From Trichoplax adhaerens (lineage: Eukaryota; Animalia; Placozoa), in contig NW_002060947.1 of the NCBI RefSeq assembly GCF_000150275.1, positions 5,371,229 to 5,435,228 on the forward strand: a stretch of DNA of 64,000 bases, in the 5' to 3' direction. Each line of letters opens with the position of its first letter. Position 1 is the first letter of the stretch. Position numbers and translations under genes: made by a program. This document shows positions 2,745-58,581 of the stretch, piece after piece. Below the pieces are notes generated by a model. That model did not search any database and was not told the origin of the DNA. It saw only the letters and a list, made by a program, of their open reading frames with translations.

Positions 2745-5700
2745 ATGGTAAGAATTCTTATCAAAGCCTAGTTATCATGTTAATGATTTTAAGCCATGTT
2801 CTATTTCTTATTTTATTGATGTCTCACTGTAATCGATCTAATAAATAGTAATCATCACCTTCACATTTCAAAGTTTATAAACATCAGACAGCTTTCTTTC
2901 TTTCTCACAGTTTTATCAAGCGTAGCAAAAAATTCGATCTCGATATGTTGAACTAAGTCAATGTTTAGAAAATTGTCTATCGATTCCACTCAGTCTAGAA
3001 TACAATGTCTACGAAGACTATTTGTTGCCTATCACCGCCCTATAAAATGATTAGACAATAATGTGAAGTACGGTGGTTATTTCAATCAACCATGAAAGAT
3101 TAAACCTTAATCGATTTAACAATTTTTTTCTAATTTTGCTACTTTTAATACCACTACAATGTTTCAATCGATTCAAAGTTTAACATTATTACATGCGAAT
3201 TTGCAAATGTTGCATACTTTTCATAATGGCTGCATGAGGGAACAATGCAGTTCGTTTAAAGATTTCCTTCCTTCGTTAGCCAATTATTGTTTTTGCCATT
3301 CCCTTTTCTACTTAAATGTGACAACAATCACTTAGAAGTTGTTATCCTAACTAATACACTTGAGCCTTGTCAGAGATTGAAATCTAAAACGGAGTTCATT
3401 TGCTTACAATTCAATCTTCTAGTATGGTTTTATACATCGTGCTTTACAAGATTTAATTGTACGCCAATATGGAGAAAAAGAATGGAAACGCATCATGTAA
3501 GTAAGAAAGGTTTTGTTTTCATTAAGATAATAATCAAGCTCTAGGTCATATCTACAGTAGAAATGGATTATCATCATAAAATACTACACCATCAATTCTT
3601 TTTGAATAAAATTCATCCATTCTCTCGAAAACTTTATGAAGTGATGATAGGCTACTATTTTGTAGTGACTAAAATATTGACTAGCAGCGGAATATTTTCC
3701 ATTTTTTTTATACTTAAGGCCTTGTACTACGATGGCACATGATAGCAAAGAGCTTATTGAAGTCTTTGCAATGCCTGATTATTCATGCGCCCCTGTTTAT
3801 TAAGGATACATCTACCGCTACACCTACATGGCTAAAGTAGTTTACTAGTCAAATATTTTCGCGCTTTTAGATAACTGGCTGATACTATTTATGTAATTAA
3901 TCCTTAGCAAGGTTTACCTCCACCCTTGTGGAGAATGCTTATTTGTGAGTTGAAGAATTAGTAATATCTCATCATTTTCTCAACTCGTCATTAGCCTGTA
4001 GAATAGCTACAACGATAAGGCCATCATTAGCATATATAGTCGCAATTCAAAGACAGCCATTTCGTGTTCTATTTCGTTTGAAGTGGTTGTTCTTACGCAA
4101 ACATCTTATCGATCATCATAATGTATTACAATCTATGTGTTCATACAGCTTGCATTTGACTAATATTATTAAGACTTGAACAAATTATCTTAGGAAATGA
4201 ACAATATGATCTCATCTGGTTGAAGAGATAACTTGATTATTCTAATAATTAGCAAGATTATGGATAATGCAACTTTACAATACATATTGCTGTACATAGT
4301 ATCTGACATTTCCTTATCGATTTAGAAAATTGAATAGCCAGAGTAGATATAGTTCTAAATCGGTATAACGAATTAATTCTGAAGCATTCATGAAATCTTT
4401 CACATGTTATTCATTAAAATAATCATCGATATGATGTTATTTTTGTAATTTTACAGTATTGACAACAATTCACTATCACGATCAGTATGATTTGTTTATA
4501 AAGTGCTAGACTATTCGGCTATTTCTCTTCATCAGACTTTCAGTCTTTTTGCAACAGTTTTAATTCTCCATCTAAATAATCATGCTCAAAAATAGTCATT
4601 CTTTGGTGATAGTCGAAGTTTAAATACCATGTAGTTAAAGAAAGTTTCCTAACCTTTTCAGGTTAATAATATAATCACATCAATTTCTATCATATAGGCT
4701 TTATGTTTTATAGATTTTATAGGTTTACAAGACCGTCTAAAATCGATAATTTAGATAATTCTATATTGTTTTCCATGATTTACACGCATTTTTATGATTC
4801 TAATGATAATATTTAAAGTAGTTGCGTTACCAGCTACTCATACGTGGCAGAACTATCTTAACAGTGTTATTGTAACTAGATTCTGTTACGTTGAATTCAA
4901 AAATTAATAAATAAATATTGTTATTGATAATTGATGATTATAGTGATAAAGCTGGTATACAAGAAGAAAGCCGAGCTTTCTTACTACATCAAAGCTACGA
5001 TGATGCATTAACTGTTAAGTTGGTAGCGACCGCTTGCGAAGTTTTAGGTAAATTAATTGTCATAATTGATTAGTAATTCACCGTAATCGATCAAGTAGAA
5101 CCTAATGCTAGTCGCTTTTATCGTTCTTAATGATATTAATTTCATTCAATTGTGTAACAATTTATACTGGCCCATTCAGTCATGATTAATACCTACGTAT
5201 ATTAAAATGGAATCGTAATACTATGATAACAGAAGCTGTATTGGCAAACCTACATTCGTATACATATACTTATTTTCTAGTCAATCGAAGAATGGTAATA
5301 TCATTCATTAAGCTTTAATTTACATATATAGTTTAGTTTATAACCTTTAGTCATAAAGTTTGAATTTAATTCTCCTCAACTTACATTTACAGCTGTTTTC
5401 GTCATCGTTGTCCAATCATCTACATGTACCGATTAAATTAGATTGATAATTAATTAATAAGGGTCGATGCCTAGTCATCAACGTTATGATAACCCAAACT
5501 CAACATGATAAAGATCCAATAGGCGATTGCAATTATTTCTGATAAATCTATAATAAAATCGTCATACAAAGTACTAATTGTCCCCAATATATCAAATTCG
5601 ACTAGAAATAAACACTAAGTATTCATTTCGACTTTTATACTAACCGTTATCGCAATCTAAACCGGCTAGTTCATTTTCGTTCCTATGAATATACTCTCAA

Positions 5701-8700
5701 GAACTTTATAATTAACCATTCATTTAGCTAGGTCATAATACATCTGTATTAAGCACTTAAGAGGGGATAAAAACTAGTATAGCTTTGCGGGGTATACCCA
5801 TGTCTTAGACAATCGACCTGGCGGAACGGAAATAAGTACCAGTACTTGCTAAATCGCTCAGCTCTACTCCTTAACTTTATTTATACCATATTTTATATTG
5901 TCTATCTAACTAATTACATCTATTTGCATATGTTCACCTTGAAGTACTGGTATTGCTATTATTTATGGATTTCTACTTTTAAATAATGTATTGGTTGTAA
6001 TCAAAAATGACTTTATATAAAATTTTTATATTAGCAAGTATCATTAAGGTTAGTAAACCAGGTTCAATATGAATGCATCTATACCGACTATCACAACCTA
6101 GTTAAACAATATTATATTTACAGTAAGTTATTAGGAAAATAGTCTTAGTTTAATTCTGTTAAAACCTAATTAATTTGGAAAATGTCTAATTTGGTGTATA
6201 ATTTATGACGTCAGAAATGAATGATTAATTAATTAATGGAAAGGCAAGCAAAAGCAATTATCCCTCGCATTAGTATGTGGGTAACAGTTTATGATTAATA
6301 ATTAATGTCAAGCAGCAATGCTAGAAGATTATATTTTTGTATTTCATAAGTGCAATCTATTCCAAATTTAGTATTTTGACGGCGATTGCATAGGCTGATG
6401 CTTCTCAAATCTACTGTGCTGAGTAATAAAGCAGGAATAATACCAAAATCCATCATTTATATTTTGAGTTATTTAAAATGTATTAAAATCATAGCCGACT
6501 AGATCTAGGGTACTCATTTTATAATAAATACTCATGAAATCCCTAGATTTTTAGTTTTAAATTGTAAAATTGTAACCTAAAGTCTACAGAAATCAGAACA
6601 CTACTCCCACGGCAAACTGATAAACAACATAAAATACTCGAAGTTCGCGTATGATAAAGATACGTTGATAGGATCGAGATAAGTTCAGAAAGAAAACGTT
6701 AAATTCTTGTTGTGGTTGTACGTCAGTGTTTGCATTTCTGTAGTTTACTACAATAAATATTATAACGAGACACATCACCATCGACAAAAAATTAATAAAA
6801 TATAAACTTTTATATTTTCATTGACACATCGATGAGTGTCTCGTCGGACCAGGATTTGAAGGTTTTGATCAGAACACAAACAAGAAATACTCGAAGTACT
6901 CGTCTGCATTGATCGTATAAACGAACCTTAAGAAAAATCTCTCACTCTTTATCATCATTAGTACATTTATAGCAAGAAAACATTAACTTCTCTCAGTTGA
7001 TGAAATTGATTCATTTTCATACATTAACTACATATTTTAGATATTTACTGGACATATGTGTAATAAATCATTTATCAGATAGTGCGTATAGATTGTTTTC
7101 CACGTACCTGCAGTTGTATTAATTACCATTGAATAGTTAAAAATTTTAGCTGTTATGTTTGCTATTATAAATGTTGAGGAAGAATAAATTTATAAATTTA
7201 ATTACATATTGTGTATAGTATCGTTTACTTCAATGATAATATCGGTATAGGCTCAGCGATAATTAATATATAGTTAGTAACATCGATTTTCTAGAATCTA
7301 GCGAACACGTTATAATTATAAGCTATTGAAAGTATTATTTGATAAAAAAATTCTATAATTTAAAAATACTATACATATTGCAATATGTTTCATAGGCAGC
7401 AGAATGGAAGATATGTTGGAGAAATTCGGAGAACATTTCTTCCAATATTGTGTAGATAATGGTTATGATCGCATCTTACGGGTATTAGGCAGTACACTAT
7501 ATGACTTCTTATTTAATTTAGACGCTCTACATGATCATTTAGGGTCTAGCTATCATGGTATGAATGCACCATCATTTCGTTGTACTTCATCACTCGATGG
7601 CAATATCATTTTGCATTATTATTCTCTACGACATGGTCTATATCCAATTGTCACTGGTATAGTTAAAACCGCAGCAAAACAAATTCATAATGCTGAAGTT
7701 AAAATTCAAGTGATATCAGTTTCAACAACCAGTAAAGGTAAATGCCATGTTCAAATGTTAATATCCCAAGCCAATAGTTCCAGTTCTAATGCTAGTTTTA
7801 TCCAAACAACCGCACCTCAATCACCTGTACGATTTAATCGATCATTATCATCACCACCAGCATTTAATTCCAATACCGCCATCACAACGAATAATAAAGT
7901 ACGCATTAAAGTTGGAACGTTTTGTCAAGCATTCCCTTTTCATATTGTGTTTAATCGTGATTTAAAAATAACCCAAGCTGGCAATTCAATCCGTCGTGTA
8001 CTCAAATTACCAGCAGATTTACCTACTGCTAATATTCATTTCAATACTTTATTTCAATTGGATCGTCCACAAATGAGATTTAACTTTAAAAATGTTATCA
8101 GCCATATAAATATTGTTTTCATTATCTCTACAATCAATGAATTATCAGACTCAGCAGCATACCAACATCAACCACAATATACTAATCATAGCCAACAACT
8201 CCATCGACAACAAAGTTGCGAAAATTTTGATAATTCTGCAACAGATGATACGAGTAATGGTAGACATCGTCACAATAGTCAGAGTGGAAACTGTGTTTCT
8301 AATACTATCAAATTAAAAGGTCAAATGGTTTATGTTCATGAATCTGATAGCATGTTATTTCTGTGCTCGCCAAGGTTTAGTAATCTGGAAGAATTAACAC
8401 AGCAAGGATTCTTTCTAAGCGATTTTCCTATCCATGATACAACTCGTGATGTTGTGCTAATGTCTCATATCCAGCGTAATCGTCGTGATTTAGTTCAATT
8501 ACGTGAACAAGCTACTAATGAATTACAAATATTGGAAATAAAATTAAGGGCAGATAAAAAACGTACCGACGATTTACTCCATTCTATTTTACCAATTCGT
8601 ATTGTCAATCAACTACGTTTAGCTCCTCGAGATCCCATTCATGAACGTTATGCCATGGTTACGGTACTTTTTAGCGATATCGTGGGTTTTACAGCATTAT

Positions 8701-11700
8701 GTTCATCATCAGATATTGATCCATTGCAAGTTGTACGTATGTTAGATGAATTATACCTGAGCTTTGACGAATTGTGCAATTTTAACGATGTCTACAAGGT
8801 AAGCTGAACCAAGTTATATATGTATCATAAAATGAGAATCGCTGCGTAAATTTGTATATTTTGGAATATCAAAATTATTACCTACGCTAAAATATTCATG
8901 TACTTCTCTAGTTGTGATAGAGAATCCGATAGCGTAGTAAGAATTGATTTAGTAGCTATAGAGATGGAAACAAATATAATTTAGTAGGACAGCGAATTTA
9001 TTATTGTGTGTTGTGATCGTGTAAGATTGAAAGTAGTTACTGTAGGTAAGTTGCTAGCTGTTGTAAAATAACATGAAACATGAGTAAAAATCATTAACAA
9101 TCATCACAGAATAATGGGTAACTGTAACAATAATAGAAATATGAACTAGATATCACTAATACTTATACCTATGAAATAGAGCACATATGGAGAATAGTAA
9201 CGTAGAATATGCATACTGTAACAGTCAATATTAGATCATTGAAAGCAGTGATGGTAAGGTAATGGGAACCATGCGTAACTAAATGCGGTAATTTGTATTC
9301 GTATAAAAGTGTGGAAAAACTGCAATTGACCTTTATCTTGAAGAGTAATTAGCCAAAATAATGGTACTGTATAATCTGCATTAGTGTAATTTTTCCTTTA
9401 AGTCTGTGATCTTTAATGATTAAGTGGCAGTTTATATAGCTGCAGCTTATTGGGATAGCGAAATATCTGCCTTGCTAATATATTTAAAGTAAGATAGTTA
9501 TTAGTTTCGTAGCAAATTTTACAGCTGTGTTTTTATATTTGTTGTAAGATATTTCTTCAACCTCACGAGCTTAAGATATGAAAGTTAAAGTTATCCTTGC
9601 CTCAATAGCAATTTTTTTATAGCTATAATTTATCACTAACTGAATAGGTGGAAACGATTGGCGATGCGTATATGATAGTTAGTGGTGTGCCTGATCCATG
9701 TTTCAATCATGCTAATAAGGTAATAAGTATGGCATTCGATATGATGGATGTGACCAAAGGAGTCCTATCGCCGGTAGATAAATCGCCTATTAAGGTAAAA
9801 GTTATAATATTTAGATATCATTAAGCGAATTAGTGTAACCATATCGCTTAAATTTTCTATTATCAAATGAGTATTAACTACCAGTACCGATAACGATAAA
9901 CTATTATCTTAACCATAACTATCCACAGGAGCAATATTTTAATTATAAGATAGCTACTAAATTGCGGTAAAATGGATTTAATTTCAGATTCTACTAGTAT
10001 CATCCGCAGCTCTATACACGAATTTTATTAAATGCTCCAATCATTGATTATATAATTACTAACAAATGTGATTAATTAATGGGAAAGTATGACAATTAAA
10101 AGTCGTTGAAAGAAATAGAAAACATTAACAAGTATAACAAAAACATCTTAATAGAGCAGCAAGTTTCGATACAGTACAATGATGAGTTAATTCAGAATTT
10201 AGTAATTCAGTATCAGAGATTATTTTAATCATTTAAAATAATTACACCTAGAGTAGAGACTTTATAATGACACTTGACATAATTTACACATGTTTGTAGA
10301 CCGTAATTGCATCTTAAGCTTCAGTGGCTTACTAGGAGTGAAATATTTCTTTATTAATAGTGAATAGGAGAATAGCACTAGCAGTTAAATAAATAATATT
10401 TTTATTCTAGCCATAAGGTTTAAGGCAATTCGTAAATCTCTGTCTACTAATTAATCCTATTTACACTTACATTTTCGCACTTTAAATACCACTCAGCATT
10501 ATCGACCTCTATTCTAAGGTTGTACGGTACTAAATAAAATAAATAATTTCAATTAGTATGGTAGAGGCTTTATAACGATGCTTGATGTGATTAACTCATA
10601 CTCGTAAACTATAATTACATTTTTAAGTTTTGGCAACATACTAGAAAAGAAATTTTACGATAATAACGGTGAACAAAAGCATTACATTAAAGTTAATAAA
10701 ATGAAATCCTATTTTTACCCCGAGGTTTAAAGGCAATTAGAAAATCCTGGCTATTTATCAAACCTATTTGTACTTGAATTTTCGTACTTTAGAAGCCTCT
10801 CAGTATTATCTGTTTTTTATTATAAGACCGTAAGATATCTAATAAAATAAGTAATTTTCAATTAAGAATAAAAGCTACGTAACGTTAGCTTTCTACTGAT
10901 GAGCTGATATAGTATGTTATCGATTTTTCTACATCCTAATATACTAAATCAATGAAAAAATTTCAATTACTATTGCAAGCTAAAGCGTAATTAGAAAACG
11001 CTAGCCGTTGATCAATCAAGCGATCTAGGGTGTTATCTAAATCTTTATGTACAGCTATAACTTACTAAATAAGTCAAATAAGTTTCCATCAGTATTTTAA
11101 ACTGCTAATCAAATCGGCCAATCAGAAATTGAATTTTTAATCCTTTTCTATCGAAATCCACATTTAGATCAGAATAGGTATCCATTCCGGTCCTGCTATA
11201 GCTGGCGTGGTTGGACAGAAAATGCCTCGATATTGCTTATTCGGTAGTACGGTAACTAATGCAAGTAAAGTTGAATCTGGCAGTCAAGAGGGAAGAATTA
11301 ATATCAGTGAAACAACTAAAATGTAAGAAATGTTATAATCATCATCAATACAACTTTAACAATAAGTCTTAGTACAGTAGAGTAAATGATATCGCTTGAC
11401 TTTGAGTTATTGAGATAGCGTACCTTTGATATCTGATATTTTTGACCTTTCAACAATAATTCAATCTAGGTCGATTGCAGATACAACTCCCTACCTTTTT
11501 GAACAAAATTATAATCAAAGCCTCAATATGCCTTGCTACTTCATTGATCTTGACCCAAATAACCTATCCCACGATAGCCAAAAACGAACTATGACGCGTA
11601 ATCTATCGATTGATCCTGCACTAAAACAGGGCATTTTCCGATCTCCTAGGCCTAGCCCACCACAAACGCCAGGCGAATCACCAGTAATTACGCCCCCAAT

Positions 11701-11776
11701 GTCACCAACATCTCCACATTTAACTAAAATCTTGTTAGATATTTCCAATTTGCCCGCTATTAATTCTCAACCGTGA
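2745..11776 (+). CDS. Soluble guanylate cyclase subunit (gene 1): alpha-type catalytic domain with intact heme-binding H-NOX; about 730 aa, 7 coding exons
   Basis: Spliced model: ATG 2745-2747 (ATG|gtaaga, tentative); 3423-3496 ([24 protein letters not shown]); 4944-5047 ([34 protein letters not shown]); 7396-8798 ([45 protein letters not shown]); 9648-9794 (VETIGDAY); 11168-11322 ([24 protein letters not shown]); 11470-11776. All introns GT-AG, phases consistent, total 2193 nt = 731 codons. Confidence 0.93.
10400..10891 (+). repeat. Diverged direct duplication of about 180 bp in a gene 1 intron (copies about 10400-10583 and 10710-10891)
   Basis: Collinear shared blocks: aggttt(a)aaggcaatt, cctattt, ttttcg.acttta, ctcag.attatc, aataaaataa.taattt(t)caatta, taacg.t(a)gctt. 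Confidence 0.75.
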
Positions 11777-27487: not shown

Positions 27488-30400
27488 ATGTCGATATTAG
27501 ATCAAGCTTTACAAGCTGTTATTGAAAAGCATTGCGCTGAAACATGGAATGAAATACAGTAAGTTTAAAAGTGATTTATTGCTTCGATATAGTTCGTAAA
27601 GTTTCTCTCTATGCTACCAATCCGATAGATCAATTTAAATTATTGACGAAATTGATTTCATCATTTAGGCAAAATATCACTAACCATCAAGAGGGTGAGA
27701 ATCCCAATTCTGAAGCAGATAACGAAAAAGAATTCTTATTTATTGAAAATTTAATCAAAATAGCTAACCAGCAACTAGGTAAATCCAAATGACTGCTTTA
27801 TTGTACGTAATATACTTATTATAGAAGAATGAGTCAAATTAGCGAGCTAACCACTAGGTAAATCAAAATGACTGCCTTACTTTATTCAATATCTTAATTA
27901 ATTATTATGTTTTACCTTAATTGATATTATATTTTTTAAGTGTAACCTATGTGGTTTTAAGATGTAGGATAGATCAGTTATTTAAATTATATCTTTCTAC
28001 GATAACTGTCTCAAGCCGATTTTGTAGTAATTCATTACCGAACAGTTTCCTTTTGCAATGATAAAGTAACCATTTGAAACTCTATCCTTTGAGGCACAAT
28101 GATTATGTTCAAAATAGTTTATTCATTAGTTATGGTTCATTTCTACTTTATCTTGTTGTATGGATCTCTACCTGTTGGTATTACTATCGAAAAAAGATCT
28201 AGAATGGGATAAATTAATGGAAGAATTTGGATATCATTTTATCCAAGAATGTCATAACGATGTCAAGTATCAACGTGTATTACACTCAATTGGCTTTACC
28301 TTATCCGACTTTTTAATCAATTTTGATTGTTTGCATGATCATTTAAATTGCTCTAAAAAGTTTACCAATATTTTACCACCATCATTTATTTGTAACGTTG
28401 AAAATCCAGACAGTATCTTGTTAGAAAGTTATCATCAACGCCATGGTTGGTCTTACTTTACCGTTGGTATCGTGAAAGCTGTTGCCGAAGTCGTTTTCGG
28501 CCAACCCGTCAGTATTGATGTTTTAGAAGCGACTACTCCCCATGAAGACTATAAGTGTCAGTACTATCGCATCCATTATAAAAATAATTCTTTAAGGAGA
28601 GCATCACAAGCTCCAAGTTCATCAACATCACCTAAAGATTTAAAAATATTACCTGCTACATTTTGTAAAGCATTTCCTTTCCATTTTATCATTAATCGTG
28701 ACATGGTATTAATTCAAGTTGGTGCAGGTTTAGTCCGATTTTTACCTAGTGAATTACCCGATATCGATATCTTTTTAGGTAGTACTATTAGCTATGAAAC
28801 ACGTTATTTTTCCGACTGCTTAAAAATGGTTAGCCCTAAAGTTGAGCCAACATTCGATCATATTTTATCCTATTGCAACTCGCGCTTTACCTTAGAAACA
28901 GTTAGCCAATTGCGCGGTAAAGCGATCCAACTACGCGGACAAATGATTTATGCCTCGGAATCGGACTGTATACTCTATGTTGGCTCACCATGTGTTAGTG
29001 CATTAGAAGAATTAAAAGGTAGAGGCTTATATTTAAGTGATATACCCGTTCATGATGCTACACGCGATGTTATTCTTGTTGGTGAACAAGCTAAAGTACA
29101 AGAAGATTTAGTTACGCGAATGCAAAAAGTAAAAGCCAAGTTAGAGCAAGCCAGTAAAGAGCTACGCCAAGAAAAAACTAAAAATGTCGATTTACTGAAT
29201 ACTATCTTTCCCAAAGATATTGCAATGAAATTATGGAAAAGAAAATATCCATTAGAACAGCTATGTCGTCGTGTTGATAATGTCACCGTTTTATTTAGTG
29301 ACATTGTTGGTTTTACAGCAATTTGTTCCACATGTGAGCCCTTTGTCGTGGTAGAAATGTTAAATCGGCTATATACAAAATTTGATGATCTTAGTGCCAA
29401 ATTAAACGTTTACAAGGTAAGATGGTTTTACCTATATGCTCATTCAAGGAATCAGTCGTGCCGATTATAGTTCCAAACGGTTAACGATATATTTAGATAG
29501 CTATCTGTGTATAACTCTAGCTTACAAATATGCCTTAAGAAAATTTCAACTACGTTGATATTTATGGATTTAGGCATGCTGATTATAGTTGGAAAGATGC
29601 TAGTTTATAAATATGCCTTTAAGATACTTTTATCTACGTTGATATTTATGGAATCGGGTATCCTGTTTATAGTTAGCATGGGTTAATAATTGACAACTGA
29701 CTGTAGATAACGCTAGATTACTAGTTTGCCTTAAGATGATTTTACCTATATTGATATTTATGAAATTAGGCGTATCGATTATACTTAGAAAGAATCAGTA
29801 AATGTAGATTGTAATTAAACAACTGACTCTTGGTAACGCTAGTTTACCGATTTGCTTCTGTTTGCCTTTAGTCGTTCCAAAATGCCAAAATTAGTAAGAT
29901 TAGTTCTATAGCGGCAATAAGAATGTCGCTCACTTAAATTATTCTTTACATCTCATAATCTTAACCATATTGATTCGAATCAGGTAGCCCTATTTACTTT
30001 ATATTTGCTTACTAATTGCGTGTGTCTACAATCGGTAACGCTTCTATACATAATCCGCATACCACAGGATTGATAACAACTTAGGTATTCGATTTTTTAA
30101 CCGTATTGCCTTGATTTATACGGAATTAATTATAAAGGCTTTACTTGGGCAGATTACATAGTTAACTTAATCCAAATTAAGCTTTATTTTCGCATAACTT
30201 GCATCCTTACAGATGGTCACAATACTTTACACCTGCTATATAATTATGAAGTAATCTAAAGGAAAATTGATGAAATCTGACATACTTATTTTTCTGCCTA
30301 ATAGACCTTATTGATTTATCCGAATTCATTAAGGTTCCATAGACAACATAAGAGTATATGCTACTGGAGGGATAATAATTTAAATTACCCTAAAAGACTA

Positions 30401-31418
30401 ATTTACAATCCCGATAGTACGTATGTATTCGCAATTTCGTACATCGAATATTACTAAAATGAATTGCGTAGTCAAATCGGTCAGTAGAAGAAAACTGATT
30501 AGCTTTTTATCTATACCAAAGCTGATTAACCTCCATAATTAACAGTATTATAAGCAACCTTGGATAAATTGGAATTCGTTTTTAATGCAGTCCGTTAAAC
30601 TACAAAACTAGCAATGTTATTAGGGTATCCAATTTCGTACTTAAAATTTTTTTCAAAACCTATCGGTAAATATGCAGTCGCTCTTACCGTATCCTTTGCA
30701 ATTTGCTTACCGCTCATTTTAGGTGGAAACTATCGGAGATGCTTATGTCGTTGCTGGAGGTCTAGAACAAAAAAGTAATCGCCATGCTCATGATGTTTGC
30801 TACATGTCCATTGGTATGCTTCTTGTTTCACAAACTGAAAAATCCCATGATGGTCAAATTATTAAAGTATGCGTTATTTGAGTGCTGTAATTTGCATGCA
30901 TTGATTGCTATTTAACGCTCCGCTTTAATACATTTTAGATGAGAATCGGAATTCATACTGGCAGTGTTGTGGCCGGTATTGTTGGATACAAAATGCCACG
31001 CTACTGCTTATTTGGTAATAACGTAAGATTGGCTAATAAAATGGAAGCATGTAGTCTGGCTGGAAGGATCAATGTTAGTCCAACTACATACAAGTAAGTT
31101 TACTAACTTCTAATCTTTTGGTAGTTAATGAAAGAATATCATTGCTATAGTTTCCTCTGCTTTAATTAATGAATGAACTAAATAATCATCGTTTGACTGT
31201 TGGATCACCCATACTGCTACATTAGGACATATTAATTATATAATTATTATTCACTTTGATATCTATCCAACAGGCTTGTACATAGCAGTAATGAATTTAC
31301 CTTCGAAAAGCGAACACCTGATTGCTTACCGAAAGATTTCCCAACTCAACCTGGTGATACTTGCTACTTTTTAAATGTTGGTAATCAAAATAATATGTTA
31401 GAAGATCGTCAGTCTTAG
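27488..31418 (+). CDS. GUCY1A: Soluble guanylate cyclase alpha subunit (gene 2); about 614 aa, 6 coding exons identified, N-terminus may extend upstream
   Basis: Exons 27488-27558 ([16 protein letters not shown]); 27669-27778; 28197-29416 ([40 protein letters not shown]); 30723-30866 ([14 protein letters not shown]); 30939-31093 ([37 protein letters not shown]); 31274-31418 (LPKDFP..CYFL, TAG). Catalytic and C-terminal segments closely match vertebrate alpha1 ([28 protein letters not shown]). Total 1845 nt = 615 codons. Confidence 0.93.
29417..29858 (+). repeat. Tandem repeat, 4 copies of about 85-125 bp, starting at the donor of the intron after the large exon of gene 2
   Basis: taagat..tttt.ccta, ttgatatttatg.aat, gattatagtt, gctag.tta and tgcctt recur. 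Confidence 0.85.
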
Positions 31419-41144: not shown

Positions 41145-44100
41145 ATGGTAAGTTAAAACGGAGAAACTAATTCTAGTAGACGGAATCCACTCTAACTACT
41201 ATCTTAATCACGATTTAAGCATATTCTAAAATATTTAAAACGATTACGTTATAGCATAATTGATTTCACAACTCCTATTACTTTTGAAGTATCATGAAGC
41301 TCAGACTTTCAATTTTTGTACCTGTATTATCACTCTGTAGCCAATAAATAGAATTATATAAAAACAAAATAACTACCAGTAGAAATTAGTAAATTCTAAG
41401 TATAGAAGAATTGATAAATAGAAAATAATATTACAATTTTCATCTACTTTTATCTCGTAATAAAGAAATAATAAGCTGCCGAGTATTTGTTAGATTATTA
41501 GTATCAAAAGATTGCAGTTTTCGTAGTCATATCTTGCTACATTGAATTTTCCATTTTTCTACGCTAGATATTTTTTAGTTCAAAAGGGACATGCAAGCTC
41601 TAGTTTCCTTCTAGTTTGAGGAAAACACAGTTCTTAATCGATACTCTTATCATAACATTTAATTATGCACTTCTCAATAGTATAGAAAAGTAAAAGGTAC
41701 AATATTAGATTAAACAGAAATCAACTGCTGTCAGATACTTACACATAAGAAGATCTTTTACAGCAGGAAAGTTTACCTTGAGTTTAAATTTCAAAATTTC
41801 AGTTATATAACAAAAGTCATTCTCTAATTAATTATTAAGTCAGTAAATTTTTATAATTTGAATTTCACCATTACTTGGTGGTATCGGAGCAAGATTTAGG
41901 AGAGAAGCAAGGAAAGGCTAATTTAATTTAGCCATATTCACCTTTTATTTGTATATGGGTTATACTAGTTTGAACATATAGCCTAGAAAGATAGTTTATA
42001 GCTGAGGATTTGTCTTCTAATATAATTTCCTATGGATTTATTTAATAAAAGCGATACAAAAGTACAAATTCGAACACCTATTATCAAATTACCATGCCCC
42101 ATAAACTTTAACTTACTGTAATAAAGGTCATCCTACCAGGAGATAAATTAGCAAATTTTGCAGTCAATCACTATAGTTTATTCAGCTATATAGTTAATTA
42201 AATCGCAAATACGTCCACGTAGAAATTTATCTAGTAATTTCCATCCCTTGCGGACTAAGCGCTAACTTCAAAATAAAAATTTTAGCTATTAAGATACATT
42301 TATTTTATCGTTGGTGTAATAACATTTAAATTTATATTAATAATTATGTCTGCTTTAAAGCGTGACATATTTCTTGATCTATTCCTATTCCATCCTGTAA
42401 TTAAAATTACATTTATTAACTCATATACATACAACTTCGAAATGATTATTTAACTTGAGAAATTAGTGTTAAAGAATCCCTTCTTATTGCTGTCATATAT
42501 AGTATACGATGTATCGGTACATGTTGTATATGAATCCTGAGCGGTAAATTTATCGTTAGTCGTCAAATCAAACGAGGAATCTCACCATTAAAACTACTAT
42601 TTCCGCTATCCTTTTCCATGCACAATAGTCTTATAAGGAAAAATTAGAAGTACTAGCTTGCAATAAAAAAATTATTACATATTAAGTAAATTGATTTAAA
42701 TTGCATGATTTTTGGTCTGAATATTTCTTATACATCCAGTGATAATAAATCTGAATCAATTCAATAGCACTTACGTAATAATAGGAAGTAGGCCACTTTC
42801 TAATAGTAATTGATACAATATATCTCAAACTGCCTAAATATTTGAAAAATAGAGATATTCGTTGTAAAGCACAAGGTAGCACCGATAGGTAGTTTTCAAT
42901 TGCTACCGTAAAAGAATGATAAATTTCAGTTTAATTAAATAATTGAATACAGTCCTTATATAACTGTGTCGAGAAAATCATATTTCTTAACTATAATTAT
43001 TCAGATTTTCATATGCAACGTGCCATATCTTCATTCAGTTGGTTTATATTAGCCAATCGACAAGTACCATATTATATTCGTATTTGTGAGGTCCTTTTGC
43101 TTAGCTTGTCTATTTAGCAATACCCTTATTTCTAAAGACTTCAAGATGTACAATATTTGATGTAACCTAAATAAATTGAGGTTATTTTACCTAAAGTTTT
43201 CAATCATCAACACTTTATAATCAAACATTAAAATACTGACTACAAATCGTCACCATGTACCATTTACTATCGGTATAAATCATTACATTAATTTTTTAGA
43301 TTAGCAATTGCAAAATTGCTTCAAAAATTTGGAACTTTTACTTTAAAGATATTTACAATCTTTCAACCTTCGTACCTATTCCATAGATATCAAACAGCTA
43401 GCATCATTAATTAAGTCTTTATGATATTCAATTGGAATGGTTTTATCTCCAACTATTGCACTAGTAAGAATGACGAATGATAAGAAAACCTTAACATTAA
43501 AATTAATTAGTAGATAGGGCGAATTATTTTTCTTCATACAAAATGTCACTTTTACTCAATGTGATGCCTGACATCATGGAAATAATTAAGTTAAAGTGTT
43601 ATCCCGTTATTAACACTTTCATATCAGTCCTTTTTATTCTAGTAAACATGCAAAGGTTTGCACTGAGAGTAAAATTATGACATCCTTTTTATTATTTAAT
43701 ACGATCCTTTATGAGTTTTCAAATTCTTACACTCTTGATAACATACTTGAAATGTAAACTGAATAAAAAACAATGTATGATATGCTACTGTCTTTACCCT
43801 TTCTAGCGTAATATTTGAATTAAAATAGATAAAACTGTAATAAAATAATTGATTCTATTTCCATACACTTGATTGGATATATATTTATTAATGGATGAAT
43901 CTTTCTTTTTTCAACAGCATGGCTTAATTAATCATGCCTTATCATTACTTGTAAAACGTAATTTTGGTGATGAAGCTTGGGATTCAATCAGGTAATAAAT
44001 AACTGTACTTAAAACATTGCTTAAGCTGATTTGCGGTCATTTATATCTTCTTGTTTATGAATTTTGATTCTTATTATCTTCCCTATGACTAGAGAGAAGA

Positions 44101-47100
44101 TAGGAATGTCAAATAGCAGTTATTTTATACAACGTAAAGTCTACGCTGACGATGTTACGTTCGAATTGGTCAAGACTGCATCTGAAGTTTTAGGTTAAAC
44201 TTATTAAGCTTTGCTGTAAATTTAAATACATTAGTAGCTCGTAGCTTTAGTCTGTATTAGCCGTCACAATTTCTTTACACTAATCGGATTACTTACTAGC
44301 GACTGCACTTGTAAATAATAATTTATCTTGTGCGTTCTAAAAATTATAATTTATCGATATGAAGTTGTGAATACTATAAACGTTCTTCTATCTCTTTGCC
44401 CTTAGTCAAACAATTATTTTTATTAATTAATAAAATAAGCATCAGTAAGGAGGATGATAAAAATCTATTTTTTATATCAATTTAATACTTTCATGAAGTA
44501 TAGTATTCATCATTTCCATGTATGAGAAATTGCTATTATTGCATAAATTTTTACTAGGTTGGATAACGTTAAAAACTTAATTTACCCTTTAAATTTTCGT
44601 TAAAGCAGTAAAATGCAAATTTAATTAAACCTTCAAAATCAAAAGTATCTAAATTTGTAAAACATGAAAACTATTTGACAGGCTTACGTAGAACTACTCT
44701 ACTTTAGACTTGTTAAAGTACTATACTTACGCGCTATTCAGTACTATAAAAACAACTTTAAATGTACATTCTGATATAAAAATTGAAAACTTTATGGTTC
44801 ATCAGATGACGACTATCGGACTAAATCAGCTCTAGACTACCTAAATTATAGCTTCATCTACTGGTCGATAGATGACCTTGCACAGTAGCAGATGTGATTA
44901 ATAATTATAATTTATAACGGAAGATTTCATTCCACATTAGCAAAAGTTTGATATGTATGCAGTTTGAGTAATGTACAAATTAAAATCTATTTTAAAATAA
45001 TGATACTATCAAACCTTGCTTGTTTAATAACATAAAATTACTTTAATTGATATAAAAAGTGAAACGTCCTTACTTTAGTACAGTATACAAATTTAGTTGC
45101 TTGTATTTTGCTTGATTAGTACCATAATGCCATATAAAAATTGTTGGACTGAGAAAGTATTAATTCAATCTTTTCGATATCTGATTCCTCTTGGATATTC
45201 ACACTAACCATTTCACAATTACACGACATCGCAAGATTGAAGGATCAATAATCTCTTTAATAAATTTACATAATGAGCATAGATTTTATCGTATGGTACA
45301 AATTAAAATGTTTCTCTTTTCTTAATGACCAAATCATGGCGCAGGTATCCAAGTTAATGACTTACTGGAAACGTTTGGCCGATTTTTTGTTAGTTTTTGC
45401 GAAGAACTAGGATATAAAAGAATTCTTGAAGTAATGGGAAGTAATCTATTCGAATTTATCAACAATTTAGACAGTTTACACGATCATTTAGCCACAATCT
45501 ATTCAGGAATGAAGGCTCCATCATTCCGATGCAAATACAACAGCGATAATGATACCATAACACTTCATTACTACTCTACTCGACCCAACTTAGAATATAT
45601 TGTTGTAGGAATCATTAAAGAAGTTGCTGAAAAAATTCACTTAATTGATATTAACATGGAAGTAGTTAAAACAAGACAAAATCAATTAGACGATATCCAA
45701 TTTTTAATCTATTCCAAAAATCCAGCAAAAGCAAGAATCAAATGCCATGATCGATTGCGGCGGTCTATTGCTAGTAGCACCAGTAATGGTATTGCTGCCG
45801 ATAATACTTCTACAACATCGACTAAAGCTGTTAGCTCAACTACTATATCATCCATCCCTATCTATCAACAACGTCAAGGAAAGCAAACGAAGAATTCTGA
45901 GACATGCAATTTTATTGCGCCGACCACTTTTTGTCGAGCTTTTCCTTTTCATGTCTTATTCGATCGAGATTTATCTATACAACAGTTGGGCCATGTTATT
46001 GAACGAATGATACCAGGCTTTTATTTAGGAGACTTGAAAATGGATAAAATATTTAAAATTGTGAGACCAGTTATTCAATTCGACTTTCATTCTATTCTAT
46101 CTCATATTAATACCGTATTTGTTTTAACCATGAAGCCACTATGCCCAAGTTTTCTAGAGCAATATCTGCAATGGTCTGACGTACGATTTAAAGGCCAAAT
46201 GATATATTTAGAGGAAAATGAAATGATGCTCTTTCATTGTTCAGTTAGTATATCGAGCTTAGAAGAATTGCGAAGCCACGGGTTATATTTATGCGATATA
46301 CCACGTTATGATGCTAGCCGGAATGTTATTTTAAGATCTGACCATTTTCGCCATGATTATCAAATGATGTTGCAACTAGAAACATTAAATGATCGCTTAG
46401 CTGATACTTACCAGCAATTACAAAAGGAGAAAGATTTAACGGGGGAATTACTATATTCAGTCATGCCTCCTTCTGTAGCGAAACAGCTTCGACTTGGCCA
46501 CAAAGCTGTTCCAAGTAAACATAGTATGGCATCTGTAATGTTTTGTAAAGTGTCAACATTTCAAGATATAACAACAAATATTGAGCCAACGAAACTAATA
46601 GCGTTGCTGAATGATATATATATTACATTTGATCAGATTATTGATCGCCAAGGTGATGAATTCTATAAGGTAAATTAAAATTTTAGACTCGAATGCACTT
46701 AATGGTGTAGTTTTATATCGTTACAAGCTAAGTACCATTGAAAATAAGATCTTTGCTATATTCTCAGTCCATATAGGACTATAGATATTTCATAAACTAT
46801 GTTAATGGTCGAAAAATTTGTTATAATTGTACCACGATCAGGTAGAAACACTGGGCGATAAGTATATGGTAGCTAGTGGAATACCGCAATATCAATCAAC
46901 ACACGCTAAAAGTATAGTTAAAGTAGCTATTGAAATGATGAATACGTCGCAAAAGCGAGGAAATAAGAAGTTATCCACTATGGTAATTCTGATAAATGTT
47001 GTTATCTAAAGGCATAATGTTCATGAGAACGTTTGTAAATTTGCTAATTTTTTGTTCCTATAATTTGAAAATAATCTCTNNNNNNNNNNNNNNNNNNNNN

Positions 47101-48073
47101 NNNNNNNNNNNNNNNNNNNNNNNNNNNNNTTCAGATGTAGATGAAACTGCAGTTTATGGGATTAGAGACCTTTACTTCATACCTACAGCAATATACCTGA
47201 GTTGCCTTATTGACATGAACTACTACGACTATCACTTTTGATTACTGTACGCCAGAGTTTGGATTCTATTAATCTTAGTAGATGATATGAAAGAACAATG
47301 GTTGAAAATTTCATAGTAAATATAGCTACAATAGTCGCTATTTATCTTATTCAAGTATTGAGAGTGATTGAACCAGACTGCATCGTAAACTGTCACCAAA
47401 CTCGACAATTTATACAATCTGTTACCATATAATTTGATACTGAAATCAGTTTATAAGCCTTAAAGCTTATTAAGCAATAAACGATATTAGTAGACCATAG
47501 CGATTTTGTAGAAATAAATATCTAATTTTTAATTTCCTTGTCGAAAATATTTTATTAGTTGTCGATAGGTATCCATAGTGGTGAGATCGTAGCTGGAGTA
47601 ATAGGTGAAAAATTGCCTAGATTTAGCATATTTGGAGATACAGTGAACATTGCAAGTAGGACACTGACCACAGGAGTACCGGGTGTTATCAATATCACTG
47701 AAGATACTTTTAGGTAAATTTCTGTCGGAACTAACATTCTATGTAGACCTAATATTGTGCCATTCGATGTATAAATGTTTATTTTAGGAGTATTTTGGTT
47801 GATCTATAAACGATAACTTTTTTGTTTAATTTAAATAATGCCTAAATTCATATTTTTTATCATTCTAACACTCTGCAACGTCATATCTTCCAATGTAGGT
47901 GCCTAGATAGCCCTAAATACTTTGAAAATAAGTATTTATTATCATGCTTAGGCCCTGTAAATATGAAAGGGCGCTCTACTCCGTTAACTTGTTATATTGT
48001 ATCACATCAAGCTAAATCTCCAGCATCAACTGCTAATGGCCAAACAAATTCTTGCCCATCTACTATTAATTAG
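41145..48073 (+). CDS. GUCY1B: Soluble guanylate cyclase beta-type subunit, divergent paralog (gene 3); about 657 aa, 7 coding exons
   Basis: ATG|gtaagt 41145-41147 (tentative); 43918-43991 (HGLINHALSLLVKRNFGDEAWDSI); 44093-44193; 45345-46669 (NLDSLHDHLATIYSGMKAPSFRC, HYYSTR, FCRAFPFH); 46842-46982 (VETLGDKY); 47559-47713 (LSIGIHSG..LPRFSIFGDTVNIASR); 47899-48073 (CLDSP..GPVNMKGR). Total 1974 nt = 658 codons. An assembly gap lies inside one intron. Confidence 0.92.
47080..47129. other. Assembly gap (50 N) inside an intron of gene 3
   Basis: Run of N visible in the sequence. Confidence 0.99.
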
Positions 48074-58400: not shown

Positions 58401-58581
58401 AGTCCATTTAATCATGAGAAATAGCTCAGCAAATAGAAGTTTCCTTTTCAAACCGAGAGAATCGGAATCGTCGCCTCAATTTACTCCTCCTTCACACGGT
58501 ACACCACCGCTTACTCTTCCAATGGAATGCCCATTCAAAACTGAAAAGCTATTGCAATCAGTGGTAAATAAACTAATATAA
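52442..58581 (+). CDS. GUCY1B: Soluble guanylate cyclase beta1-type subunit, canonical NO receptor (gene 4); about 675 aa, 7 coding exons
   Basis: ATG|gtaaat 52442-52444; 52848-52921 ([25 protein letters not shown]); 53689-53789 (FLLRMIYDD); 56421-57664 ([42 protein letters not shown]); 57781-57921 (VETVGD); 58022-58176 ([24 protein letters not shown]); 58272-58581 (MKGRKEPM). Motifs nearly identical to vertebrate beta1. Total 2028 nt = 676 codons. Confidence 0.96.

What the first reader, a model, noticed from the sequence alone, without database searches (positions are those of the whole stretch)
3423..11322. Gene 1: alpha-type catalytic subunit with an intact heme-binding H-NOX (possible two-heme sGC)
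Seen: beta-like start (MYGFIH..), proximal His in NLDALHDHL (CAT 7530-7532, beta1 H105 equivalent), P118-equivalent APSFRC and complete YxSxR (HYYSLR, 7617-7631). These are joined to an alpha-type cyclase ([28 protein letters not shown], no MKG). Established: vertebrate alpha subunits have a heme-less pseudo-H-NOX and the heterodimer carries one heme, on beta. Inference: a gene 1/beta dimer could hold two sensor hemes and may reflect the state before alpha lost heme binding, or a domain-swap chimera.
Basis: partly seen in the sequence, partly recalled or inferred. Interest (0 to 1): 0.88.

Follow-up and report, generated by a model that had tools for sequence, protein, structure and literature searches.

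The report
Heme-type sensor on alpha-type cyclase subunit
[quoted passage not shown] It belongs to an old, unstudied animal clade that may form two-heme enzymes, which remains untested.

Summary
Gene 1 is TRIADDRAFT_25423 of Trichoplax adhaerens, a seven-exon, 730-codon soluble guanylate cyclase (sGC) gene.

- **Transcript:** RNA contigs join the exon holding the heme residues to the last three exons, which hold the rest of the cyclase domain.
- **Heme signature:** His106, Pro119 and Tyr135/Ser137/Arg139 are all intact.
- **Catalytic site:** the subunit has both metal-binding Asp and the beta4 Arg. It has Thr for the ribose Asn, Lys for the transition-state Arg, and no RG..KGKG hairpin. It can therefore supply only the alpha-side half-site and should need a beta-type partner.

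The interpretation needs correcting in four ways.
- Gene 1 is not the alpha orthologue; that is Gene 2, next door.
- It is not a placozoan oddity. It belongs to a conserved clade found in cnidarians, an annelid, amphioxus, a centipede, ticks and mites.
- Its likeness to beta1 in the H-NOX domain is all ancestral retention, and no domain conflict is significant, so a chimera is not needed.
- Its sister link to alpha rests on one 20-column functional motif and could be convergent.

Some true alpha subunits of invertebrates also keep the full heme signature. Heterodimers of two heme-type subunits already have precedent: genetic evidence for nematode GCY-35/GCY-36, plus, from my recollection only, Drosophila Gyc-88E/89D. 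Heme binding, the partner and two-heme stoichiometry are untested.

The parts
2745..2747 (+). Inferred start codon at the 3' end of a first exon (ATG|GTAAGA). It would supply the Met of M-Y-G-F-I-H.
   Evidence: Only two ATGGT[AG] sites lie upstream of 3423, and this one has a consensus donor. The H4 orthologue starts MYGFIH. It was not seen directly in RNA; an RNA contig extends 255 nt 5' of 7396, which fits.
3423..3496 (+). Exon encoding H-NOX residues 2-26 (YGFIHRALQ...). It is preceded by the acceptor ..tctag and followed by the donor GTAAGT.
   Evidence: (HNOB profile positions 1-25)
4944..5047 (+). Exon encoding H-NOX residues about 26-61 (DKAGIQ...ACEVLG).
   Evidence: Its 3' end is the loose end found before 7396 in RNA contigs of X10 and X7.
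7396..8798 (+). Large exon holding the H-NOX core with all heme residues, the PAS/HNOBA domain, the coiled coil and the start of the cyclase domain with the first metal Asp. It also contains two low-complexity inserts.
   Evidence: RNA contigs cover it without any internal splice, so the internal 'introns' of the public model are wrong.
7530..7532 (+). His106 codon, equivalent to the proximal heme ligand beta1 His105.
   Evidence: (alignment to human beta1)
7617..7631 (+). Tyr135-x-Ser137-x-Arg139, the heme-propionate-binding YxSxR motif.
7641..7643 (+). Tyr143 in G-L-Y-P-I-V. This Tyr sits where the nematode-specific (GCY-35-type) sGC clade has one.
   Evidence: PMC1435932. Its functional meaning is untested.
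8676..8678 (+). Asp488 (FSDIVGFT), the first metal-binding Asp. Beta1 subunits have Gly here.
9648..9794 (+). Cyclase exon with Glu530 and the second metal Asp534 (VETIGDAY).
   Evidence: (joint 8798>9648)
11168..11322 (+). Cyclase exon with Arg579 (IRIG), Cys600, Thr607 at the ribose-Asn position and Lys611 at the transition-state Arg position.
   Evidence: (joints 9794>11168 and 11322>11470)
11470..11776 (+). Last exon with the end of the cyclase fold. It has no RG..KGKG hairpin (the sequence ends ...MPCYFID), then a Pro/Ser-rich tail and the stop codon.

Best explanation
Gene 1 (TRIADDRAFT_25423) is an intact, expressed subunit of soluble guanylate cyclase. It belongs to an ancient animal clade separate from alpha, beta1 and beta2.

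**Shown from sequence**
- Its N-terminal H-NOX keeps every residue known to hold heme.
- Its cyclase domain carries only the metal/triphosphate side of the active site: two Asp and the beta4 Arg.
- It lacks the ribose Asn, the transition-state Arg and the hairpin Lys.

**Inferred**
- The subunit binds heme.
- It cannot make a working active site with itself, so it acts as the alpha-like half of a heterodimer.
- The other half is a beta-type subunit. Candidates in the same tandem cluster are Gene 4 (beta1) and Gene 3. The homodimer-competent paralogues elsewhere in the genome are also possible.
- Because those partners also have the heme signature, the enzyme would carry two gas-sensing hemes, with cGMP output set by both sensors.

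The combination is best read as retention of the ancestral heme domain in a subunit whose catalytic face specialised. It does not look like a recent fusion.
For: **Gene and transcript**
- Spliced RNA contigs from two studies are.
- The ORF is a complete 730 codons and is 80.5% identical to the H4 transcript protein.

**Heme residues**
- They align residue for residue with human beta1 in the solved-structure search, and the HPYSR code appears.

**Catalytic half-site**
- The motif alignment is and the alignment to the homodimeric CYG12 cyclase is.
- Residue roles come from PMC2576301.

**Clade**
- It holds 14 rows, from placozoans, Nematostella, Montipora, Sanderia, Capitella, Branchiostoma, Strigamia, ticks and mites. 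One further cnidarian-grouping row (P0029, from a Logan assembly) has no species name.
- It is monophyletic in the N-terminal tree (98, then 97) and in the cyclase trees (93; 99/91 in the careful tree).
- Thirteen rows have the full heme code; the Rhipicephalus row is gapped at the Arg column. None has the ribose Asn.

**Partners**
- The window holds four tandem sGC genes: two alpha-side types (G1, G2) and two beta-side types (G3, G4).
- Three more loci elsewhere in the genome have the full homodimer set.

**Not a chimera**
Against: - No biochemical datum exists for this protein or any clade member: no heme content, partner or activity.
- Lys at the Arg position might keep some activity. Three clade members (Sanderia, Varroa, Tropilaelaps) do have Arg there.
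- By overall similarity the cyclase domain is nearest to homodimer-type cyclases.
- The link to alpha depends on one motif, so 'alpha-like' is a statement about sites, not about descent.
- The partner is not identified. I did not examine co-expression.
Confidence: 0.6

Rival explanations
1. Gene 1 works as a homodimer (or with a close copy of itself) like beta2 or atypical sGCs. On this reading Lys611 and Thr607 give weak but real catalysis, so no beta-type partner is needed.
For: After its own clade, the closest cyclase-domain relatives are beta2-type proteins (169-182 bits, 54-61% identity). Among solved structures the closest is the homodimeric Chlamydomonas CYG12. The AYM[IV]V-[SG]-GVP motif matches beta2 rather than alpha.
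Against: All three beta-side catalytic residues are missing or changed, and the ribose Asn is missing in every clade member. The same three losses define alpha subunits, which are inactive alone (established for mammalian sGC; PMC2576301).
Confidence: 0.13
2. Gene 1's lineage began as a domain-swap chimera. Unequal crossing-over between neighbouring beta and alpha genes joined a beta N-terminus to an alpha cyclase domain.
For: The N-terminal trees lean towards G1+beta1 (SH-aLRT 91; best in the AU test). The cyclase tree gives G1+alpha (99/92). Alpha-type and beta-type genes lie in tandem in this window with matching exon structure.
Against: No topology is rejected in any domain: G1+alpha has p-AU 0.29 on N-terminal data, and G1+beta1 has 0.18 on cyclase data. 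G1 shares no derived H-NOX state with beta1 alone. Outside the catalytic motif the cyclase domain does not group with alpha and looks ancestral. The alpha N-terminus sits on a long branch, which can mimic this pattern.
Confidence: 0.08
3. The alpha-like half-site arose by convergence. On this reading the clade is an independent offshoot of a homodimeric ancestor that lost its beta-side residues on its own, so it says nothing about how alpha lost heme.
For: The G1+alpha grouping vanishes when the first-Asp column and the 20 motif columns are removed. The same Arg-to-Lys change occurs independently in nematode sGCs and in another distant clade. AU tests cannot separate the three topologies.
Against: Four identical derived states (T, N, K and S in V-T-x-A-N-K-x-E-S-x-S), plus loss of the RG..KGKG hairpin, are shared with alpha. 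The concatenated data prefer G1+alpha (p-AU 0.76 against 0.36 and 0.13).
Confidence: 0.3
4. Despite the intact signature, the H-NOX does not hold heme in vivo, so it is a pseudo-sensor as in vertebrate alpha. The enzyme would then have one heme.
For: Placozoan Gene 2 (alpha) shows that the His can persist while Tyr and Ser of YxSxR are lost (HPSHR code). Single residues therefore outlast function.
Against: All five signature residues are kept in nearly every row of a clade spanning placozoans to chordates and arthropods; the one exception is an alignment gap. 27 further H-NOX columns stay in the ancestral, beta1-like state while alpha varies. This is the pattern of purifying selection on a working heme pocket.
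Confidence: 0.1

Closest known systems
Canonical sGC alpha subunit (GUCY1A1/A2; here Gene 2 of the same window, whose H4 orthologue is P0233)
   Same: The catalytic half-site is the same. Both have two metal Asp, the beta4 Arg, Thr at the ribose-Asn position, Lys at the Arg position (V-T-x-A-N/S-K) and no RG..KGKG hairpin. An obligate partner role is expected.
   Different: Gene 1 is a separate clade: the alpha clade has 100% support without it. Gene 1 keeps the His, Pro and YxSxR residues and a beta1-like H-NOX (314 bits to human beta1 against 171 to alpha1). Vertebrate alpha lacks these residues (LAYFK and LPYHH codes). Outside the motif its cyclase core is not alpha-like.
sGC beta1 subunit (GUCY1B1; here Gene 4, TRIADDRAFT_56641)
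   Same: The heme signature is complete and the H-NOX/PAS/coiled-coil region is highly similar.
   Different: Beta1 has Gly at the first metal Asp, Thr at the beta4 Arg, and keeps Asn, Arg and the MKGK hairpin. That is the complementary half-site. The beta1 clade excludes Gene 1 (97-100% support).
Atypical sGC pairs in which both subunits are heme-type: C. elegans GCY-35/GCY-36 and Drosophila Gyc-88E with Gyc-89Da/Db
   Same: They set the precedent for alpha/beta-like heterodimers built from two subunits that both keep the heme His (PMC1435932). Some carry Lys at the Arg position, as the nematode rows do. Gene 1 also shares the G-L-Y-P Tyr of the nematode-specific clade.
   Different: These proteins fall in other clades, in the beta2/atypical part of the tree. 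The nematode proteins keep the ribose Asn and the KGKG hairpin. The Drosophila pairing is from my own knowledge; the paper (PMC1307573) was not held.
Beta2 (GUCY1B2) and homodimeric sGCs such as Chlamydomonas CYG12
   Same: They are the best overall match to the cyclase domain. They also have a heme-type H-NOX and both metal Asp.
   Different: They carry the full residue set for a symmetric homodimer (D, D, R, N, R, K). Gene 1 lacks N, R and K.

Membership tests
Soluble guanylate cyclase (H-NOX / PAS-HNOBA / coiled coil / class III cyclase) | All three Pfam domains in order on one polypeptide | tested here: met
   HNOB 7e-33, HNOBA 6e-65 and Guanylate_cyc 2.6e-13 on the large exon, and up to 2.8e-20 on the later exons. 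One mRNA joins them.
Heme-binding (beta-type) H-NOX | Proximal His (beta1 His105), Pro118 and the Tyr135-x-Ser137-x-Arg139 motif | tested here: met
   His106, Pro119, Tyr135, Ser137 and Arg139 are present. They are conserved in 13 of 14 clade rows; the exception is a gap.
Heme-binding (beta-type) H-NOX | Heme actually bound (Soret band, stoichiometry) | not testable with these tools
   This needs expressed protein.
Alpha-side (AC C1-like) catalytic subunit, defined by sites | Two metal-binding Asp and the beta4 triphosphate Arg are present | tested here: met
   Asp488, Asp534 and Arg579 are present. Residue roles are from PMC2576301.
Alpha-side (AC C1-like) catalytic subunit, defined by sites | Ribose Asn, transition-state Arg and beta7-beta8 Lys are absent | tested here: met
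   Thr607 and Lys611 replace the Asn and Arg, and there is no RG..KGKG hairpin.
GUCY1A (alpha) orthologue group | Falls inside the alpha clade in trees of both halves of the protein | tested here: not met
   The alpha clade (100%) excludes it. Gene 2 is the alpha orthologue. A sister position to alpha is inconclusive.
GUCY1B1 (beta1) orthologue group | Falls inside the beta1 clade; Gly at the first Asp; Asn/Arg/Lys kept | tested here: not met
   The beta1 clade (97-100%) excludes it, and the site pattern is the opposite.
Beta2 / atypical homodimeric sGC | Full symmetric catalytic set (D, D, R, N, R, K) on one chain | tested here: not met
   N, R and K are lacking. In the N-terminal trees it does not group with beta2 or the nematode proteins.

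The most novel reading that the evidence does not exclude
The Gene 1 clade is the surviving 'proto-alpha': a subunit caught after the catalytic faces of alpha and beta had specialised but before alpha gave up its heme. Its heterodimer would then be a two-sensor enzyme. With Tyr143 placed as in O2-binding nematode GCY-35, the Gene 1 heme could prefer O2 while the beta1 heme reads NO. One cyclase would thus integrate two gases in an animal without neurons.
Probability: 0.12. Interest if true: 0.85.

Novelty: new variant of a known kind. Interest (0 to 1): 0.6.

Why it matters
Textbook sGC has one heme, on beta, and a heme-less alpha whose H-NOX has no agreed role. This clade is conserved from placozoans and cnidarians to amphioxus and arthropods, and it pairs an alpha-type catalytic face with a fully conserved heme pocket. 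Canonical alpha proteins of some invertebrates also keep the signature. Together these suggest that two-heme heterodimers may be the older and commoner state, and the one-heme enzyme of vertebrates and insects a derived one.

That makes an old question testable with a handful of recombinant proteins: why sGC is asymmetric, and what the alpha H-NOX once did. It also matters for annotation, because databases file these genes as 'beta-1-like' and the Trichoplax model is partial and mis-spliced.

Tried and rejected
1. **'MYGFIH starts at 3423'.** Rejected: a TAG at 3420-3422, the end of the intron, directly precedes the Tyr codon.
2. **The public model's two internal introns in the large exon.** Rejected by RNA contigs.
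3. **My own first assignment of the ribose Asn to the residue after F-G (Ser604).** This was wrong. The alignment to CYG12 and the four-residue spacing to the Arg put it at Thr607. The fifth letter of the site codes is therefore beta1 position 545, not the catalytic Asn.
4. **Gene 1 as an alpha orthologue, a beta1 orthologue or a beta2-type homodimer.** Each failed a membership test.
5. **Single-domain trees for PAS and the coiled coil.** These were too weakly resolved to use.
6. **AU test with the site-heterogeneous model.** It did not finish in two 300-second runs. I used LG+F+G4 on 49 taxa instead.
7. **First custom IQ-TREE runs.** One failed on thread count and the next timed out.
8. **Placement of the clade in the motif-free cyclase tree.** I could not read it out because the script machine was lost.
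9. **Papers.** Searches for the locus tags and for two-heme sGC found nothing specific. Morton et al. 2005 (PMC1307573) was not held.
10. **Complex prediction and structure prediction were not used.** Any two sGC cyclase domains would dock, so a pass would not single out a partner.
11. **The joined spliced model was not sent to any search tool.** Searches used exon references or the public proteins P0001 and P0003. The joined CDS was built only inside one script, to count its length and stops and to compare it pairwise with P0003.


Full report
**What the window is.** The window is from Trichoplax adhaerens. Gene 4 translates to TRIADDRAFT_56641 at 100% identity, and earlier notes on this genome agree. 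The + strand carries four sGC genes in tandem:
- Gene 1 at 2745/3423-11776.
- Gene 2 at about 28205-31094.
- Gene 3 at about 43915-48070.
- Gene 4 at 52848-58578.

The genome holds seven H-NOX loci in all. That matches the 'seven sGCs' counted by Moroz et al. 2020 (PMC7400543), who gave no residue-level analysis. Gene 1 is TRIADDRAFT_25423 (XP_002112523.1, 'partial', 571 aa).

**Gene structure.** The exons are:
- ATG 2745-2747 (inferred)
- 3423-3496
- 4944-5047
- 7396-8798
- 9648-9794
- 11168-11322
- 11470-11776

All introns are GT..AG. A TAG, which ends the intron, sits directly before the Tyr codon, so the Met lies on an upstream exon.

RNA-seq contigs from two studies give the transcript evidence (X13, 2505 nt; X7, 2986 nt).
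- They cover the large exon without any internal splice.
- They join it to the three following exons.
- The contig sequence that runs on 5' of 7396 is the end of exon 4944-5047.

The public model is therefore wrong in four ways. It lacks the start, removes two low-complexity stretches as introns, ends with a Met read from the intron donor after 11322, and misses the last exon.

The joined CDS is 2193 nt, or 730 codons, with one terminal stop. It is 80.5% identical over its whole length to the transcript-derived protein of placozoan H4, P0003. The heme residues and the first catalytic Asp lie in one exon, and RNA joins the rest.

I sent no joined model to a search tool. Searches used exon references or the public proteins P0001 and P0003.

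**The H-NOX.** Pfam HNOB matches all three N-terminal exon translations. The large exon aligns to human beta1 at 314 bits, against 171 for alpha1. In that alignment [14 protein letters not shown] and H-Y-Y-S-x-R match residue for residue. The key residues are His106 (7530-7532), Pro119 and Tyr135/Ser137/Arg139 (7617-7631). These are the residues listed as universal for heme-binding H-NOX domains in PMC1435932.

**The catalytic face.** Winger et al. (PMC2576301) assign the roles in a homodimeric sGC.
- Monomer A supplies two metal Asp and a beta4 Arg.
- Monomer B supplies the ribose Asn, the transition-state Arg four residues later, and a Lys in the beta7-beta8 loop.

Gene 1 has the whole A set: Asp488, Asp534 and Arg579. 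It has none of the B set.
- Thr607 replaces the Asn.
- Lys611 replaces the Arg.
- The RG..KGKG hairpin is replaced by ...N-M-P-C-Y-F-I-D.

Canonical alpha shows the same pattern (V-T-L-A-N-K, no hairpin). Beta1 shows the mirror image: Gly for the first Asp, Thr for the beta4 Arg, and the B set kept.

I first mis-assigned the Asn to Ser604. The CYG12 alignment corrected this.

Gene 1 is therefore an alpha-side half-site by residues and should be inactive with itself. That last step is inference from what is established for mammalian sGC and adenylate cyclase.

**Relatives.** The large exon's best hits outside placozoans (about 44% identity, up to 393 bits) score above both Trichoplax beta1 (326 bits) and vertebrate beta1 (about 313 bits). 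The full-length hits share M-Y-G-F-[IV]-[20 protein letters not shown] and a Lys or Arg in x-A-[NS]-[KR].

I built trees of 108 (quick) or 104 (careful) non-redundant sGCs from profile alignments.
- These proteins form one clade with Gene 1 (14 rows).
- Named members are Trichoplax, H4, Nematostella, Montipora, Sanderia, Capitella, Branchiostoma floridae, Strigamia, three ticks and two mites. One further row, P0029, has no species name.
- Support is 98 (N-terminal half), 97, 93 (cyclase) and 99/91 (careful cyclase tree).
- Thirteen of the 14 rows carry the heme code H-P-Y-S-R; one is gapped at the Arg. None has the ribose Asn. Three have Arg instead of Lys.
- I saw no vertebrate, insect or nematode member among the hits. 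That is not proof of absence.
- Databases call these proteins 'beta-1-like'.

**Alpha sister, chimera or convergence?**
- The careful cyclase tree joins this clade to alpha at 99/92.
- The N-terminal trees lean instead to G1+beta1 (SH-aLRT 91).
- AU tests on 49 taxa reject nothing in any domain. On N-terminal data, G1+beta1 is best and G1+alpha has p 0.29. On cyclase data, G1+alpha is best and G1+beta1 has p 0.18. On concatenated data the values are G1+alpha 0.76, G1+beta1 0.36 and alpha+beta1 0.13.
- A column count explains the N-terminal lean. In 27 H-NOX columns G1 equals beta1 and the outgroup while alpha differs. In no column does G1 share a derived state with beta1 alone. So the likeness to beta1 is retained ancestry.
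- In the cyclase domain, four derived states are shared with alpha. All four lie in the Asn/Arg motif.
- When I removed the first-Asp column and 20 motif columns, the G1+alpha grouping vanished. The machine was then lost, so I could not read where the clade went.
- By plain similarity the cyclase domain is nearest to beta2-type and homodimeric cyclases.

My reading is a distinct old lineage with an ancestral-looking body and an alpha-type catalytic face. Common descent of that face with alpha is somewhat more likely than convergence. A chimera is unnecessary but not excluded.

**How unusual is it?**
- Gene 2, the true alpha (best hits alpha-2 and alpha-1), keeps the His but has lost the Tyr and Ser of YxSxR.
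- Among relatives of Gene 2, several proteins keep the full signature: P0285 (placed in the alpha clade) and a Littorina 'alpha-2-like' protein, P0342. Several shorter unnamed proteins recovered by the Gene 2 search, including P0272, do so as well; the Littorina and short proteins were not placed in my trees.
- Amphioxus alpha-2-like reads H-P-Y-S-S. Vertebrate alphas read L-A-Y-F-K or L-P-Y-H-H.
- Heme-signature loss in alpha is thus patchy and lineage-specific.
- Heterodimers of two heme-type subunits are already proposed for GCY-35/GCY-36 (PMC1435932). From my own knowledge they are also proposed for Gyc-88E with Gyc-89D.

The two-heme idea is therefore a variant of a known theme, not a new category. 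However, no paper I could search describes this clade or its site pattern.

**Likely mechanism.**
- Shown: an intact, spliced and expressed gene, a conserved heme signature, and a half-site pattern.
- Inferred:
  - The H-NOX binds heme.
  - The subunit pairs, through its PAS, coiled-coil and cyclase domains, with a subunit that supplies Asn, Arg and Lys.
  - Gene 4 and Gene 3 lie in the same cluster and have that set. Gene 3 reads G-D-K-Y-M, A-S-R and M-K-G-R, with Cys replaced by Ser.
  - The loci on C1414 and C1411 have the full set.
  - The result would be a dimer with one active site and two hemes.

Tyr143 in G-L-Y-P-I-V matches the Tyr of the nematode-specific clade that includes O2-binding GCY-35. 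This leaves open a different gas preference for the second heme. That Tyr is present in only four of the 14 clade rows (both placozoan rows, Capitella and amphioxus).

**Verdict.** It is a new variant of a known kind, and its interest is moderate to high for sGC evolution and mechanism.

Noticed in passing
window 2745-58578: Four sGC genes lie head to tail on the + strand with the same large-central-exon structure. Two are alpha-side types (G1, G2) and two are beta-side types (G3, G4). Alpha and beta1 genes are also neighbours in vertebrates (my knowledge), so the tandem arrangement may be very old.
   Followed up: partly
window 28130-31094 (Gene 2): Gene 2 is the true alpha orthologue ([15 protein letters not shown]). 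It keeps the proximal His (C-L-H-D-H-L) but reads E-S-Y-H-Q-R where YxSxR should be, an intermediate stage of heme-site decay.
   Followed up: partly
window 45329-48070 (Gene 3): This beta-type gene has Lys where beta1 has Gly (M-F-C-K-V-S-T-F). It has Ser for the guanine-side Cys (P-R-F-S-I-F-G-D), as another first-reader note says. A run of unknown bases (translated as X) falls inside its intron near 47080-47130.
   Followed up: partly
window 7404-8798 versus public model P0001 / XP_002112523.1: The public Trichoplax model starts at M-G-F-I-H and splices out two low-complexity stretches that RNA shows to be exonic. It ends with a Met read from the intron donor after 11322 and lacks the last exon.
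   Followed up: yes
window 6799-6916 joined to 7396: One low-depth RNA contig (X9, record 16) joins 6916 to 7396 with AT..AG ends. It may be an alternative 5' exon, an unprocessed form or an assembly artefact.
   Followed up: no
window 7641-7643: Tyr143 in G-L-Y-P-I-V is the same Tyr as in the nematode-specific sGC clade. It is shared with Capitella and amphioxus clade members. Nematostella has a Tyr one residue later.
   Followed up: partly
proteins P0285, P0342, P0272, P0382 (relatives of Gene 2): Some canonical alpha-clade or alpha-named proteins keep the full heme signature: an unnamed Logan-derived protein, a Littorina saxatilis alpha-2-like protein and several short unnamed ones. Amphioxus alpha-2-like keeps all but the Arg. 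'Heme-less alpha' is therefore not universal.
   Followed up: partly
L008/L011 (G000 C1414), L009/L012 (C1411), L010/L013 (C1401): The other three Trichoplax sGC genes are of the beta2/atypical type. Two of them carry the full homodimer catalytic set (F-S-D, G-D-A-Y, I-R-I-G, T-V-N-T-A-S-R). The third is divergent (P-R-Y-S-V-F-G-N-A-V-K-F-A-G-R).
   Followed up: partly
window 2745-2747: The first coding exon appears to contribute only the ATG at its very end. The second codon starts a new exon 675 bases downstream.
   Followed up: partly
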